Part shown: in pieces, positions 52,187 to 64,000 of the stretch
Layout: each line of letters starts with the position of its first letter
Numbering within the stretch: position 1 is the first letter of the stretch
Assembly (NCBI RefSeq): GCF_016433145.1
Contig: NC_058133.1
Coordinates: forward strand, 188,792,069-188,856,068
DNA length: 64,000 nt
Reading direction: 5' to 3'
Source: Gracilinanus agilis
Lineage: Eukaryota
Notes under the pieces: model-generated
The model's input: only the letters and a program-made list of their open reading frames with translations
Told to the model about the DNA's origin: nothing
Databases searched by the model: none
Position numbers and translations under genes: made by a program

Positions 52187-58714
<6,528 letters not shown>

Positions 58715-60589
58715 TATTTCTACTCCCAGGGAGCCCCTTCTCTTAGGCCTTCCACCAGGGATGTGATTTTGGATAGTGTTTCTAAACAGGATGGTAAAGA
58801 GACTGCTGAGGGCCTTTGGTGACTTTTATTATCAGCTTTTAAATTTCTGGATTTTGGCCAATCATTAAGAGTTCTTATATATGTGTAAATGGCAAGGGAA
58901 AAGGCAAAGAGCCAGGTATATTTCACTAAAATTTTTGTAACTTTTTTTTTTATTAGGAACTTAAGCAACATTACAGAAGAGAATGAACATGCAATTTTCA
59001 TCCCTCCATATTTCCTTCCCACCTTTGTAAATCCATGTACATTTTTGAAGAGTTGTAATCATTGTATATTTTGTTTTTGTCTGTTTCTTAACTTAACATG
59101 ATTTCACATATACTATTTGCGTGTTTCAATATACTGTACATAGTTCATAATCATCATATAGTGGAATGAACATTGGATTTAAAGCCAAAAAATTGTGAAG
59201 TCCCACATCTGACATTTACCAACAGTATGACCACTCAATATATCTAAACCTGTTTCATCATCTGCAAAATGGAGTAACAGTAAACTTCCTTTGTCACTAA
59301 GCTGTGAAAAAAGTGCTCTGTAAAGTGCTATCTAAATACAAACTACTGGTATATTAGTTTCCACAGTTTATTGAGCCATTCCCCTATTCTTGCTTATTGG
59401 GGCTGTTTCCAATTTTATAAACAGTGCTATAACCACTTTTGTAAAACAACTATTTTTTCCAGTTATTTCCTTGGAATATATTCTCTTTTGTGGAATCACT
59501 TGATCACAAGATATGTGCAATTTTATAGCTTTTGCTTTTAACAATCCATTTCTCCTTTAGGCCTAAATTTAGGTTCTGAACCTGCAGTGACTTCTCTCCC
59601 AAGTTGAGGGAGGAGGAGACAAAATTTCTAAGGTTACATACCACAGAATAACTTTCCTTGTTGCCTTTGGGCACATGATGAAACACACTCCACCCTCAAG
59701 CTGGAAACCAGCCTTCCACTTAACAGCTTCATGTCTTTTGGTTTATATCTGTAATGACAATGTGCTCTGGGATATCTCAGTTCCTCCAATATTATCAGTT
59801 GGCAAACAAAGATTGCAGACCTAAACAACAGTTAAATTGTCTAGACAGTCAAAGAACTGATTCTTAAAAGTTTCCCTTTCCTACCATTCTGTCACCATAA
59901 CCAAGGAAGTTATGTCTGCTGCCCAGGGCAGAGGGTCATTTTATAAACTTAGGATGATCTTCTTTTGTACTTAGCTGGGCTGGTCCTTAGACAGCAGGTA
60001 TAATTTATCTCTGAGGACATATTTGAAGCCTTTCCAGGTTGGAAGGACTGCCAGAATGTATGTTTATTTGCCCTTAAAAACAAAAACTATAACAACCAAA
60101 AAAACAAGGGTTGGGCAGCCAAGTGGCCTAGAGTTGGGAGGTCTTGGGTTCAAATCTATCCTCAGATACTTCCTAGCTGGATGACCATGGGCAGTCATTT
60201 AACCTCAGTTGCCTAGGCCTTACTACTCTTCTGCCTTGGAATCAAGACAGAAGAGGTAAAAAAACAAAAACAACAACAAAAACCCCCAAACAAACAAGGA
60301 TCATCTCCATACCACCACAAAGCATTTCTCTCAAAACTGGGCTGCTATAATTTTGTATTAATTTTACTCTACCCAGAACATGATGTGGTTATCTGTGAAA
60401 AATGCTATTTGAAGACATTCATTTGGATGAGGTTCATGACTGGCATTAGCCAGATAGTGATCTAGTTCTGAGAAGAGGAATGCTTATTTTTTCAAATAAG
60501 CAAAAAAAAATGAAATACTTATTTTTCAAAGGAAACAACATTTCGGGGAGCATCAATAATGTCAAGAATTCTGCTGGAAGCTGATTCCT

Positions 60590-60870
60590 CCATGGCACCA
60601 CAGTTTAGGAAGGGTATTGATAAGCAGGAGATCTTCCAAAGAGCAAGCATGTCGGTGAAGGGTCTTGAGTCTATGTCATATGAGGATAATTGAAGGAACT
60701 GGAGATGTTTAGCCTGGAAAAGAGAAGAAAGGGGAGAGAAATGGAGAGAGAATGGTACATGATAGCCAAGTTCAAATGTTGGAAGAATATCACTTGAAAG
60801 ACAGATTAGCATTTTCTGTTTATACCCAGGGGCCAGAACCAGGAGCAATGGGTAGAAGTTATAGAGTGGG
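60590..60870 (+). mobile_element. CR1/L3 LINE 3' fragment
   Basis: GAAGGAACTGGAGATGTTTAGCCTGGAAAAGAGAAG ... CAGAACCAGGAGCAATGGG matches the CR1 RT C-terminal region as recalled. Confidence 0.65.
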
Positions 60871-61869
60871 AATGGGGGAAGGGAGCGTCTGGAAGAAGAG
60901 GCTGGACAGGGGCCTAGGTAGAACAGTGGATAGAATGCCAGGCCTGGAACCAGAGGACCTACATTCAAATCTGGCTCAGACACTTCCTAGCTGTGTGACC
61001 CTGGGCCAATCACTTCAACCTAATTACATAGCCTTTACTGTTCTTGTGCTTTAGTATCAATTCTAAGACAGAAAATAAGGTCTCAAAAAAAAATAGAGGC
61101 TGGAAAATCACATTTGTTACTTTTTAATGTGGAGAATCCTTTTTGGAAGTAGGTTGGACTATCTGGCCACTGAGGTCCCCTTCAAGTCAGGCCCCTAGAT
61201 GTTGCATATAAATAAAATCCTGCCTCAGATACTTAGCTGTGACCCCAAGGAAGTCAATTAACCCTAGTCAGTCTCATCTATAAAATGGGAATAATAGTAC
61301 CCAGGTTATAGTGCTAGGAGGATCAAATGAGACAATATACATAAAGGGCTGTGCAAACTTAAAAAGCTACACAAATGCTAATCACTATTTTAATTATGAT
61401 TAGTATTTCAATTCTGACACAGATTCTGTGAAGTTGGTAGAATCAGGAATTTTCCCCATGCTTGGGAATTAATATTCTTAGGCAGTCCTATGTTGGCTCA
61501 GACAGTAATTGGGTTCAGTTGTAATTAATCTATTTACTATCTGCGATTTACTACTCTGGGCCAGTCTGCATCTAAAAATTGAAAAGAATATACCAGACTA
61601 TTTCTAAAGTCTTTTCCTGCTCTAAATTCTAAAATACTGTGAACCAGTGCTAAGAATAGTTCTTTGAAGAACACTCGGTACAAAGGGCTTAAGAGGTCCA
61701 CTTAAGTACTGAAAGTGTTTCCCTCATTTTCATCTTAATTTATATTTTCTAACTTCACTCTACAACAAAAAAAATTTTGATCCTTCTAAAGAAAATTCAA
61801 GTTTAATTTCCCCCGAAGAATGCTGTTGCCATAGCACCTCTCCTTCATTACTATTATTTTTTAAAGAAC

Positions 61870-62060
61870 TAGCTGTAGCCACGTAGTATAGTAGAGAGGG
61901 TTTTGGTCCTGGAGTCAGCAAAGCCTGGGTTCAAATCCAGTCTCAGACATTTGCTAGCTCTCTTACCTGGGCAAATCACTTAACCTCTGACTCAATTTTC
62001 CCACCTGTAAAACCCGAATAATAATAGCACCTGCCTCCTAGGGTTATGGTGAGGAAACAT
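61870..62060 (+). mobile_element. MIR SINE immediately 3' of the TAF9-like gene
   Basis: GGAGTCAG...CCTGGGTTCAAATCC...GGGCAAATCACTTAACCTCTGACTCAATTTTCCCACCTGTAAAA MIR core. Confidence 0.75.
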
Positions 62061-62375
62061 TTTGCAGCCAGCTACTGTGATTTATAATATATGATATTCT
62101 TAAAGTCCTAGTGAAATTTTAGGCTTTAGTTGCTGACTTGCCCAGGAATATTATTGTTGCCTGTATAGCACGAGACTTCTATCTTTATCAATTTAAACCT
62201 GCACCAAGACTTTTAGGTCACCCTATGACGCCTGGGACGCTCCTGCATTATTTAGTACCTTCTAGCTATAGTAAGACTTTTGGGACACCTGCCACAGCCA
62301 GAGTGTCGGAAAGCCGGCACTCCAGTCTAATCTTACATCTTACCTTTGACAAGACACCAGGTCGGCTTCTGTCCT

Positions 62376-63200
62376 TTACAAATTGTCATAGTCGTCATCA
62401 TCTTCGTGTTTCCTTTTCAATGAATTCGAGGACTCAGCAGGGGTGCTCTGCGACGATGAGGAGGAGGAGGACGACGACGACGAAGAAGACGACGACGAAG
62501 ATGACACCATGTTGGTGGTGATGAGGATATTCTTGGACCCGATGAGGGAGGGGTTGATCAGAACATTCTGCACCGAGGGCGCCGCGGGCATCGCGGCCTT
62601 GACCGCGGGGCTCTGGGAGGCCGGGATCTGCACGGTGAACCTCTGCCCGGCCAGGGACAGCGGGGTCGCGACATCAGCGGCCACGGCCACTGCAGGCGCT
62701 GAAGAGGGCGCGCCTAGGGTCGGGGTGCCGGGTCTGCTGCTGACGGCGCCCACGCTGAGTCGGGGCACGGTGATTCTGCCCGCCGCGGAGGGCACTTTTT
62801 TGGGCAGGGACTTCAGCCGGTAGTTGGGTGCCGTTAAGCAGTAGCGGTCTGGCGGGAGTCGAGGGCCCGAGTAGGGCTTGATCAGCGGCAGTGGGGTCTG
62901 GTTCTTCTGCCGGGCTATGTCTAACAGGAAGTCCCTCGGCGGTGGCGCCGTGAACGACTGGTCGGCCCGGCATTGGATGGCCAGCCGCACATCATCAGCA
63001 TCCACGGCTGGTTTCTTGGCGTGGCTCGAATAAATCTTGGCATCGTCCAAAATCGTGGTGACGTAACGGAAGGCGAACTCCAGCATTTGGTTGATGACCC
63101 TTGGTTCGTACTCTGTGATCCCCATATCCTTCAAGATTTGGGCCATCACCTGTGCGTCTTTTGGTGTGCTCTTGGGGGACGCCATCTTGCCCGGCTCCAT
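62376..63200 (-). CDS. TAF9: Intronless TAF9-family protein (TFIID subunit 9, histone-fold), 274 aa, probable retrogene with an 18-Ser insertion
   Basis: [63 protein letters not shown]...[15 protein letters not shown]...[10 protein letters not shown]...[21 protein letters not shown](S18)Q...[14 protein letters not shown]. Single uninterrupted 825-nt ORF. TAF9 versus TAF9B orthology is unresolved. Confidence 0.93.
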
Positions 63201-63443
63201 GATTTCCGGTGTTCGCACTTCACTTCCGATCTCTGAAAGCTTCGCCAAAGGTTATTAAACGACCGGGAAGGAAGAGTCCCCGATTTCCGTTTTCGCTAAT
63301 TTGGCCCACGCCGCCTACCGTCCCTAATCTCTTTTAGGATAGTTTGCCGCCGCAGAGGAAACGCAGGTCTTGCCTAGGGCTTGAGCTCCGCCCTTGCCAG
63401 GTCCTTCTGTTTAGCATTCCGCGCGGCCAGAGAGCCAGCAACC
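63201..63443. promoter_or_regulatory. Compact bidirectional promoter between the TAF9-like gene (-) and AARSD1 (+)
   Basis: 243 nt between divergent ATGs; ETS-type CGGAA(G/A) cores at about 63204, 63223 and 63284; CpG island; no TATA box seen. Confidence 0.75.
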
Positions 63444-63755
63444 ATGGCGTTCCGGTGCCAGCGGGACAGCTATGCTCGAGAGGTGAGACCAGCGGCAGGG
63501 AAGGAAGGCTGGGGTGGGGGTGGGGGTGGGGCTCGAGATAGAGGGGGCAGGGGCGGGGGTGGAGCGTGCAGGCTCGGCCAGCAAGCCCCTCCTTACGGCC
63601 CTCCTTCTGTTCCGCAGTTCAGCACCACGGTGCTTTCTTGCCGCCCTGCGGAGCTGCTGATCGATGGTTCGAGCAACCACAAGAACAAGGAAAAGCTAAG
63701 CGGTTACCTCGTGGTCTTGGAAGATACATTACTTTTCCCCGAGGGCGGGGGCCAG
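63444..63755 (+). CDS. AARSD1: Alanyl-tRNA editing protein Aarsd1 (AlaX), first two coding exons join(63444..63482,63618..63755); continues beyond the window
   Basis: MAFRCQRDSYARE|FSTTVLSCRPAEL...LSGYLVVLEDTLLFPEGGGQ, containing the AlaX/AlaRS FPEGGGQ motif. Kozak ACCATGG; GT-AG junctions. Confidence 0.95.
63511..63531 (+). other. Canonical G-quadruplex motif G4-T-G5-T-G5-T-G4 in AARSD1 intron 1
   Basis: GGGGTGGGGGTGGGGGTGGGG, read directly. Confidence 0.7.
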
Positions 63756-64000
63756 GTGCGAAAGCCCCGCTCCTAGTTTAGACCACGCCTTTGCGCTCTA
63801 GCCACTCTCCCGCAGTTCTTCGCCCAGACCACGCCCCTGCAATAGCCCCGCCCTCAGAGTCACACTTCTTTCCCAGCTCCTCCCTTTGTGTCCCAATATT
63901 GTCTTCAAGCTCATTCTCCACTTCTTTGGGATTATCTCCTGGAGGGCAGGAGAGAAGGCTCCTGCTGAATGGGACATTAGAGATCACTTCTTTTTACTGA

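What the first reader, a model, noticed from the sequence alone, without database searches (positions are those of the whole stretch)
62376..63200. Intact intronless TAF9-family gene at a locus where I know of none in eutherians
Seen: an uninterrupted 274-aa ORF with an almost invariant histone fold, GC- and CpG-rich codons, and no residual poly(A) tail or TSD (old insertion). It mixes residues I recall as TAF9-type ([33 protein letters not shown]) and TAF9B-type ([29 protein letters not shown]). Known: human TAF9 has a single-exon CDS at the AK6 locus, TAF9B is intron-containing and X-linked, and human PTGES3L-AARSD1 has no TAF gene between them. Inference: an independent marsupial retrogene (possibly an out-of-X backup for meiotic sex-chromosome inactivation) or the relocated marsupial TAF9, kept by purifying selection.
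Basis: partly seen in the sequence, partly recalled or inferred. Interest (0 to 1): 0.85.

Follow-up and report, generated by a model that had tools for sequence, protein, structure and literature searches.

The report
Conserved marsupial TAF9 retrogene beside AARSD1
An intron-free copy of the X-linked transcription-factor gene TAF9B sits back-to-back with AARSD1 in an opossum and has stayed almost unchanged in a wombat too, so marsupials gained an autosomal TAF9 much as placental mammals did, at a different place in the genome.

Summary
Window 62376-63200 (minus strand) is an uninterrupted 274-codon ORF. It matches Pfam TFIID-31kDa end to end (1.5e-52) and human TAF9 and TAF9B chains over its full length.

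The genome is assembly GCA_016433145.1, which also encodes a protein labelled Gracilinanus agilis TAF9B. That parent is multi-exon and lies on an 82-Mb contig, probably the X. The intronless copy lies on a 523-Mb contig. It sits between a p23-family gene (PTGES3L-like) and AARSD1, 244 bp head-to-head with the AARSD1 start codon, inside one CpG island.

A wombat protein is 97.3% identical to it. The parent TAF9B is only about 92% identical between opossum and wombat. So the copy predates crown marsupials and is under strong purifying selection.

The four therian lineages (marsupial retrogene, marsupial TAF9B, eutherian TAF9, eutherian TAF9B) form a near-polytomy. An origin independent of eutherian TAF9 is favoured by the different insertion site. 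It is neither shown nor rejected by sequence (AU p = 0.18).

Transcription, tissue pattern and any role in compensating for meiotic X silencing remain untested.

Verdict: a real, functional retrogene and a new member of a known kind. No paper on it was found. This scan has not noted it on other DNA.

The parts
62376..63200 (-). Intronless TAF9-family coding sequence: 274 codons plus stop. Histone fold at about residues 10-130, a Ser/Pro/Ala-rich linker, the conserved C-terminal block [23 protein letters not shown], and an acidic tail.
   Evidence: Alignments.
62446..62499 (-). In-frame run of 18 serine codons, a mix of TCA, TCT, TCG and TCC. The wombat orthologue has 4 serines here.
63201..63444 (.). 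244-bp spacer between the TAF9-copy ATG (63200, minus) and the AARSD1 ATG (63445, plus). It is the presumed shared bidirectional CpG-island promoter. The stretch just 5' of the ATG stays in frame without a stop up to 63248, and it resembles the N-terminal extension of the wombat gene model.
   Evidence: Promoter activity was not tested.
62400..63800 (.). CpG island (CpG observed/expected 0.6-1.2, GC 0.53-0.72). It covers the whole retrogene CDS, the spacer and AARSD1 exons 1-2.
63445..63483 (+). AARSD1 exon 1 coding part (MAFRCQRDSYARE, then a gt splice donor). Exon 2 lies at about 63617-63757.
   Evidence: In one search the public annotation has a 527-aa gene with a tRNA_SAD domain on the opposite strand, spanning the retrogene.
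61800..62375 (-). Presumed 3' UTR. There is no canonical AATAAA in the first 350 nt. An ATTAAA lies near 61807-61812. A MIR-like SINE is embedded at about 61900-62040. No poly(A) remnant.
   Evidence: The 3' end is not mapped.
52525..58035 (+). Upstream neighbour: exons of a p23-family (PTGES3L-like) gene at 52525-52638, 52901-53005 and 57946-58035.
   Evidence: motifs. E = 2e-8 to human PTGES3, residues 2-38.

Best explanation
This is a functional retrogene. A spliced TAF9B mRNA was reverse-transcribed and inserted between PTGES3L and AARSD1, antisense to both, very early in or just before the marsupial lineage. The multi-exon parent is probably X-linked. The insertion left the ATG 244 bp from the AARSD1 start codon, inside the AARSD1 CpG island. 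The most likely way it is expressed is divergent transcription from that bidirectional, housekeeping-type promoter (inferred).

The product keeps the complete TAF9 histone fold, which pairs with TAF6 or TAF6L, and the conserved C-terminal block. It should therefore serve as the TAF9-type subunit of TFIID and SAGA (inferred from homology).

Since the opossum-wombat split it has evolved about three times more slowly than the parent TAF9B. I read it as the marsupial counterpart of eutherian TAF9: a broadly used autosomal TAF9 that also keeps supply going when the X is silenced in male meiosis. It was most likely made by a separate retroposition from the one that put eutherian TAF9 into AK6.

Shown: the intact ORF, family membership, the intronless copy against an intron-bearing parent on another chromosome, presence in two marsupial superorders, strong constraint, and the CpG island with head-to-head layout.

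Inferred: promoter sharing, breadth of expression, complex incorporation, the MSCI rationale, and independence from eutherian TAF9.
For: - ORF and family. Human TAF9 scores 3.4e-125 and human TAF9B 4.6e-114, both over the full length.
- Same assembly for copy and parent: the copy is on a 523,219,341-bp contig and the parent, labelled G. agilis TAF9B, spans 6.3 kb on an 82,251,158-bp contig.
- Wombat and Petaurus TAF9B span 13.5 kb for 256 codons.
- Marsupial TAF9B lies on 60-103-Mb chromosomes in eight other species.
- Wombat orthologue P0001 differs at 7 of 258 aligned residues (97.3% identity). TAF9B differs at 20 of 238 between Monodelphis and wombat.
- The two retrogene proteins form a clade at 100/99.
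- Under neutrality the ORF would stay open in 0.4-4% of simulations at 0.15-0.3 substitutions per site, per lineage and ignoring indels.
- CpG observed/expected is about 1 across the CDS, against 0.2-0.3 in the flank, which implies long-term germline hypomethylation.
- Mouse Taf9 is a retrocopy hosted in Ak6, and recruitment of a neighbour's bidirectional promoter is a documented route to retrocopy expression (PMC4772013).
- More than 20 guessed-RNA runs from 8 studies of a related organism hold 32% of the sampled words of the stretch.
Against: - Transcription is not demonstrated. The only laid contigs are 170-185 nt, low depth and unstranded. The same runs hold a supposedly silent intergenic control completely. 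So coverage could come from PTGES3L-AARSD1 read-through on the other strand.
- The wombat gene's genomic position could not be fetched, so shared synteny is inferred from sequence orthology only.
- The ML tree joins the two TAF9B lineages (94/89), with five shared derived residues. Read at face value, that puts the copy's origin before the marsupial-eutherian split.
- No other marsupial orthologues appeared in the protein searches. This may be an effect of masking or clustering of the window's own protein.
Confidence: 0.7

Rival explanations
1. Single origin. One TAF9B retrocopy arose in the therian stem, after monotremes split off, and it is the ancestor of both eutherian TAF9 and this gene. 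One lineage then replaced the original insertion by a secondary retrocopy or a rearrangement, which explains the different loci (AK6 against PTGES3L-AARSD1).
For: - The ML tree groups marsupial and eutherian TAF9B at 94/89 and leaves the two retrogene lineages together at 39/68.
- Five derived residues are shared only by the two TAF9B lineages: Q17L, V136G, L183V, S202P and S222P. Both retrogenes keep the ancestral state at these positions.
- All four lineages share therian-only states Y44F, E52D and T206A, so the origin follows the monotreme split.
Against: - The insertion sites differ. Mouse Taf9 sits in Ak6, while this copy lies between p23-family and AARSD1 exons.
- PMC2276528 found no X-derived retrogene on the therian stem and dated the core-transcription retrogenes to the eutherian ancestor.
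- Three derived residues are shared only by this copy and marsupial TAF9B: Q133P, S172A and T207A. Other conflicting pairs reach the same count or fewer, and only one residue is shared by the two retrogenes alone.
- The species-wise topology is not rejected (AU p = 0.18).
- This reading needs an extra retroposition plus a loss.
Confidence: 0.17
2. Testis-restricted back-up. The gene is expressed mainly in meiotic and post-meiotic male germ cells, like PGK2-type out-of-X retrogenes. TAF9B remains the somatic TAF9 of marsupials.
For: - The parent lies on a chromosome of X-like size.
- X-derived retrogenes are typically expressed in meiotic and post-meiotic spermatogenic cells (PMC2276528).
Against: - The copy shares a CpG island with the housekeeping-type AARSD1 promoter.
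- It is more constrained than the parent, the pattern expected of the principal copy.
- Guessed-RNA runs from eight different studies of a relative all hold the same share of the stretch, which fits broad expression better than testis-only expression. Tissues are not known, however.
Confidence: 0.1
3. Processed pseudogene or annotation artefact. The ORF is open by chance and makes no protein.
For: There is no direct transcript or protein evidence here. No paper describes the gene.
Against: - The copy is intact in two lineages that belong to different marsupial superorders and is 97.3% identical between them.
- The chance of the ORF surviving neutrally is 0.4-4% per lineage from substitutions alone.
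- Every conserved TAF9 block is retained.
Confidence: 0.02

Closest known systems
Eutherian TAF9, the retrocopy of X-linked TAF9B hosted in the AK6 gene
   Same: Same parent gene family. The CDS is intronless and the full histone fold and C-terminal block are kept. It is 83.7% identical to macaque TAF9. It is autosomal, it evolves more slowly than TAF9B, and it keeps ancestral residues that both TAF9B lineages have changed.
   Different: The insertion site and the way a promoter was obtained differ. Eutherian TAF9 borrows AK6 exons and start sites as chimeric transcripts (PMC4772013). This copy lies head-to-head with AARSD1 in a shared CpG island. It lacks the long poly-Asp tail of eutherian TAF9 and has a poly-Ser run instead. 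Orthology is unresolved.
Marsupial TAF9B, the multi-exon parent on a chromosome of X-like size
   Same: 79-83% identical. It shares the marsupial-only states LPKK and PAAP and has the same domain layout.
   Different: The parent has introns, with a 6-13.5 kb span, and lies on another chromosome. It carries 10 derived residues of its own, including E30D, R34K and P113L. It has diverged about three times more between opossum and wombat.
Parallel out-of-X retrogenes of housekeeping genes: PGK1 to PGK2 and marsupial PGK copies, and CETN2 to CETN1 and a marsupial copy (PMC2276528)
   Same: An X-linked housekeeping parent gave rise to old autosomal intronless copies fixed early in both therian lineages.
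   Different: Those examples are testis-specific. Here the promoter context and the level of constraint suggest a broadly used copy. Expression was not measured.
Retrocopies expressed from a neighbour's bidirectional CpG promoter (PMC4772013, its figure panels E and F, e.g. HTR7P1 with HEBP1)
   Same: The copy inserted just upstream of, and divergent from, a CpG-island gene start.
   Different: Promoter sharing here is inferred from the layout only. There are no CAGE or RNA data.

Membership tests
TAF9/TAF9B (Pfam PF02291, TFIID 31-kDa subunit) | Full-length match to the family profile above the curated cut-off | tested here: met
   177.3 bits against a cut-off of 29, residues 10-130 on profile positions 2-122 of 122.
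TAF9/TAF9B (Pfam PF02291, TFIID 31-kDa subunit) | End-to-end similarity to TAF9 and TAF9B chains seen in solved TFIID and SAGA structures | tested here: met
   human TAF9 3.4e-125 (query residues 1-272); human TAF9B in 7ktr 4.6e-114.
TAF9/TAF9B (Pfam PF02291, TFIID 31-kDa subunit) | Conserved C-terminal block ([20 protein letters not shown]) and acidic tail | tested here: met
   the block is identical to the vertebrate consensus.
TAF9/TAF9B (Pfam PF02291, TFIID 31-kDa subunit) | Pairs with TAF6 or TAF6L and is incorporated into TFIID and SAGA | not testable with these tools
   Needs co-immunoprecipitation or mass spectrometry.
Functional retrogene (processed copy under selection) | Intronless CDS where the parent has introns, at an unlinked site | tested here: met
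   Searches show a continuous ORF. Searches show parents spanning 6.3-13.5 kb. Searches place copy and parent on different contigs of one assembly.
Functional retrogene (processed copy under selection) | Poly(A) remnant and target-site duplication | tested here: not met
   Searches found none. This is expected for an insertion tens of millions of years old, so it does not argue against retroposition.
Functional retrogene (processed copy under selection) | ORF kept intact and constrained in distant species | tested here: met
   97.3% identity between didelphid and wombat; neutral ORF survival 0.4-4%. dN/dS was not computed because no orthologue DNA was available.
Functional retrogene (processed copy under selection) | Transcribed from its own strand | tested here: inconclusive
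   runs hold the sequence, but the contigs are unstranded and short, and the control stretch is held as well.
Out-of-X retrogene compensating for meiotic sex-chromosome inactivation | Parent is X-linked in the same species | tested here: inconclusive
   the parent is on an 82-Mb contig, and on 60-103-Mb chromosomes in other marsupials. The chromosome name is not given by the tools.
Out-of-X retrogene compensating for meiotic sex-chromosome inactivation | Expressed in meiotic and post-meiotic male germ cells while the parent is silent | not tested
   No tissue-labelled reads were available.
Orthologue of eutherian TAF9 | Same insertion site (within AK6) | tested here: not met
   the flanks are a p23-family gene and AARSD1; mouse Taf9 lies in Ak6.
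Orthologue of eutherian TAF9 | Forms a clade with eutherian TAF9 that excludes both TAF9B lineages | tested here: inconclusive
   present in the best tree at only 39/68; the alternative topology is not rejected (p = 0.18).

The most novel reading that the evidence does not exclude
The marsupial gene and eutherian TAF9 descend from one retrocopy exported from the proto-X in the therian stem, before marsupials and eutherians split. One lineage later re-housed it. That would make TAF9 the first out-of-X retrogene older than the split. It would place the selective pressure for export (MSCI, or early X differentiation) before the split rather than after it. A milder variant is two independent exports, followed by five identical parallel substitutions in the two relieved TAF9B parents.
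Probability: 0.17. Interest if true: 0.65.

Novelty: new member of a known kind. Interest (0 to 1): 0.4.

Why it matters
TAF9 is a core subunit of TFIID and SAGA. Placental mammals are known to rely on an autosomal retrocopy (TAF9) while the X-linked original (TAF9B) became specialised. This finding shows that marsupials hold an equally old and equally constrained autosomal copy at a different locus, obtained by a different promoter-capture route.

That adds a core-transcription example to the short list of X-linked housekeeping genes exported in parallel in both therian lineages (PGK1, CETN2). The four lineages diverge so close to the therian split that the gene is a useful test case for dating the onset of meiotic X silencing.

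It also flags an annotation problem. In the wombat, database names for TAF9 and TAF9B are swapped between the retrogene and the parent.

Tried and rejected
- The second lay gave only two short contigs. No strand, splice or 3'-end information was obtained.
- The 'silent' control stretch 59000-60450 turned out to be fully held by the same runs, so it could not separate RNA from DNA.
- No mammalian locus could be fetched as DNA because the files are too large. The wombat retrogene protein, with or without its N-terminal extension, is not on record as a gene call. So there is no dN/dS, no synteny check in wombat, and no nucleotide tree.
- Unnamed Logan and ENA hits that might have been marsupial orthologues proved to be eutherian TAF9 or chimeras.
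- The Monodelphis 'TAF9-like' protein P0155 was rejected as an orthologue. It carries the didelphid TAF9B-specific insertion and lies on a 760.8-Mb contig with no AARSD1 neighbour among the called genes.
- Supplements of PMC2276528, PMC2657826 and PMC4772013 held no TAF9 entry, or were not held as text.
- The bacterial promoter and terminator scan and NCBIfam are not applicable to this gene and returned nothing.
- Pfam did not recognise the short flanking exons. A PDB sequence search recognised the p23-family exon but not AARSD1 exon 2.

Full report
**1. Observation**

The minus strand of window 62376-63200 carries an uninterrupted ORF of 274 codons that begins [11 protein letters not shown] and ends DDDDYDNL. 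It matches Pfam PF02291 (TFIID 31-kDa subunit) over the entire profile, at 177 bits against a cut-off of 29. It aligns end to end with human TAF9 from TFIID structures (3.4e-125) and with human TAF9B from the SAGA structure 7ktr (4.6e-114).

GC3 is 0.77. CpG observed/expected is 0.8-1.2 across the ORF, the 244-bp spacer and AARSD1 exons 1-2, against 0.2-0.3 in the 3' flank. No poly(A) remnant or credible target-site duplication is present.

**2. Where it is**

Exact look-up places the protein on a 523-Mb contig of assembly GCA_016433145.1. The same assembly encodes P0176, which NCBI labels 'TAF9B [Gracilinanus agilis]'. That gene spans 6.3 kb on an 82-Mb contig. So the window is from a didelphid opossum, and the intron-bearing parent survives on a different chromosome of X-like size.

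In eight other marsupials TAF9B lies on chromosomes of 60-103 Mb. The bilby differs, with TAF9B on a 705-Mb chromosome. In wombat and Petaurus the gene spans 13.5 kb for 256 codons.

On the plus strand upstream of the ORF there are p23-family exons at 52.5-58.0 kb. One of them matches human PTGES3 residues 2-38 at 2e-8. Immediately on the other side is AARSD1 exon 1, with its ATG at 63445. The public annotation has a 527-aa gene with a tRNA_SAD domain that spans the retrogene on the opposite strand.

The copy is thus antisense between PTGES3L and AARSD1, head-to-head with AARSD1.

**3. Relatives and age**

The best hit is a wombat protein, P0001 (UniRef A0A4X2LVS9). Apart from a 15-residue N-terminal extension in that gene model and a shorter serine run, it differs at 7 of 258 aligned positions, which is 97.3% identity. 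The two proteins form a 100/99 clade. Opossum and wombat belong to the two deepest marsupial branches, so the copy predates crown marsupials.

TAF9B itself is only 91.6% identical between Monodelphis and wombat. The retrogene has therefore been the more constrained paralogue.

Simulated neutral evolution leaves the ORF open in 4% of trials at 0.15 substitutions per site and in 0.4% at 0.3, for one lineage and without indels. Neutral drift could not keep 97% protein identity either. Purifying selection is the only reasonable reading. A formal dN/dS could not be computed because no orthologue DNA could be fetched.

No other marsupial orthologue appeared in the protein searches. The window's own protein is also missing from that collection, so its 90% cluster may be masked. 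The blank is therefore not evidence of absence.

**4. Relation to eutherian TAF9**

Mouse Taf9 is itself a retrocopy hosted in Ak6 (PMC4772013). I built a tree from 51 vertebrate proteins under a site-heterogeneous model. Four rows were left out: platypus P0239, Bos P0202, Elephas P0181 and Tenrec P0237. The first three have aberrant or truncated stretches in the alignment; the Tenrec row (263 aa against about 250 for the other eutherian TAF9B) was set aside without inspection.

- The tree gives a therian clade at 99/99 with four well-supported groups.
- Marsupial and eutherian TAF9B join at 94/89.
- The marsupial retrogene and eutherian TAF9 are left together at only 39/68.
- Forcing the species-wise topology (marsupial copy with marsupial TAF9B, eutherian TAF9 with eutherian TAF9B) costs 4.8 lnL, and the AU p is 0.17-0.18.

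Counting derived states against non-therian tetrapods:

| Lineages sharing the state | Count |
|---|---|
| All four therian lineages | 3 |
| The two TAF9B lineages | 5 |
| Retrogene and marsupial TAF9B | 3 |
| Marsupial TAF9B and eutherian TAF9 | 3 |
| Retrogene and eutherian TAF9B | 2 |
| The two retrogenes | 1 |
| Private to each lineage | 10-18 |

The signal is conflicting and close to a hard polytomy. All four lineages separated near the marsupial-eutherian split and after monotremes branched off.

Different insertion sites favour two retropositions. So does the published finding that X-derived retrogenes appear only after the split, in parallel in both lineages (PMC2276528). A single therian-stem export followed by re-housing is not excluded, and I give it about 0.17.

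**5. How it most likely works**

The protein keeps every conserved block of TAF9: the histone fold that pairs with TAF6 or TAF6L, the C-terminal [21 protein letters not shown] block, and the acidic tail. It should therefore be a working TFIID and SAGA subunit.

Its ATG is 244 bp from the AARSD1 ATG, within one CpG island. The absence of CpG decay over the whole CDS implies long-standing germline hypomethylation. Recruiting a neighbour's bidirectional CpG promoter is a documented route for retrocopy expression (PMC4772013).

I therefore propose divergent transcription from the AARSD1 promoter, broad expression, and a role equivalent to eutherian TAF9, including cover for the parent during meiotic X silencing. 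These steps are inferred.

Direct evidence for transcription is weak:
- More than 20 runs guessed to be RNA, from eight studies of a related organism, hold 32% of the sampled words.
- Three small runs of the window's own organism hold 60-89%.
- Only two short unstranded contigs could be laid.
- The same three runs also hold an intergenic control stretch completely. The signal could therefore come from read-through transcription on the other strand.

**6. Novelty**

The gene exists in automatic annotation, as a wombat Ensembl model and as an NCBI gene call in this assembly. Five full-text searches found no paper describing a marsupial TAF9 retrogene or its AARSD1 location. It may be one of the unnamed opossum entries in the supplementary table of PMC2276528, which is not held as text.

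It is a new member of a known kind: a parallel out-of-X retrogene expressed by bidirectional promoter capture. It has one open point of wider interest, which is its timing relative to the therian split. Interest is moderate.

Noticed in passing
P0001 and P0126 (wombat proteins): Database names look swapped in the wombat. The intronless copy is named 'TAF9b' in UniRef/Ensembl. The multi-exon gene carries the UniRef name 'TAF9', while NCBI calls it TAF9B. Automatic orthology seems confused by the near-polytomy.
   Followed up: partly
P0155 (Monodelphis, 760.8-Mb contig): This is a 176-aa 'TAF9-like' gene model spanning 8.2 kb. Its C-terminal 145 residues derive from didelphid TAF9B and share the didelphid-specific insertion. 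It has an unrelated N-terminus and no histone fold. It looks like a younger partial or chimeric copy, not the orthologue of the window's gene.
   Followed up: partly
P0139 and P0176 against australidelphian TAF9B: Didelphid TAF9B carries an insertion of about 8-10 residues (AVAKPGNETG) and many linker changes that australidelphian TAF9B lacks. The parent evolves fast in opossums.
   Followed up: no
window 59000-60450: This AT-rich stretch between the p23-family gene and the retrogene is held at 0.99-1.00 by the three small runs of the window's organism. If those runs are RNA, the stretch is transcribed, for example as a long PTGES3L 3' UTR or read-through. About 16% of its words also occur in RNA and DNA runs of a third organism, which suggests a shared repeat.
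   Followed up: no
window 58228-63755: The public annotation has a 527-aa model with a tRNA_SAD domain that spans the whole retrogene on the opposite strand. This fits a PTGES3L-AARSD1 read-through that would be antisense to the TAF9 copy.
   Followed up: partly
P0166, P0168 and P0180 (ENA contigs): These are proteins from short contigs of unknown origin. Their N-terminal half is a degenerate eutherian TAF9B and their C-terminal half is TAF9-type. They are either chimeric assemblies or a chimeric retrocopy.
   Followed up: no
window 62446-62499: The serine run has 18 residues here and 4 in the wombat. It is encoded by mixed TCA, TCT, TCG and TCC codons, so it is not a pure microsatellite.
   Followed up: partly
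P0124 (Macrotis lagotis TAF9B): In the bilby, TAF9B lies on a 704.7-Mb chromosome instead of the 60-103 Mb seen in other marsupials. This would fit an X-autosome fusion in that species.
   Followed up: no
window 63511-63531: There is a perfect (GGGGTG)x3.5 tandem repeat in AARSD1 intron 1, inside the CpG island.
   Followed up: no
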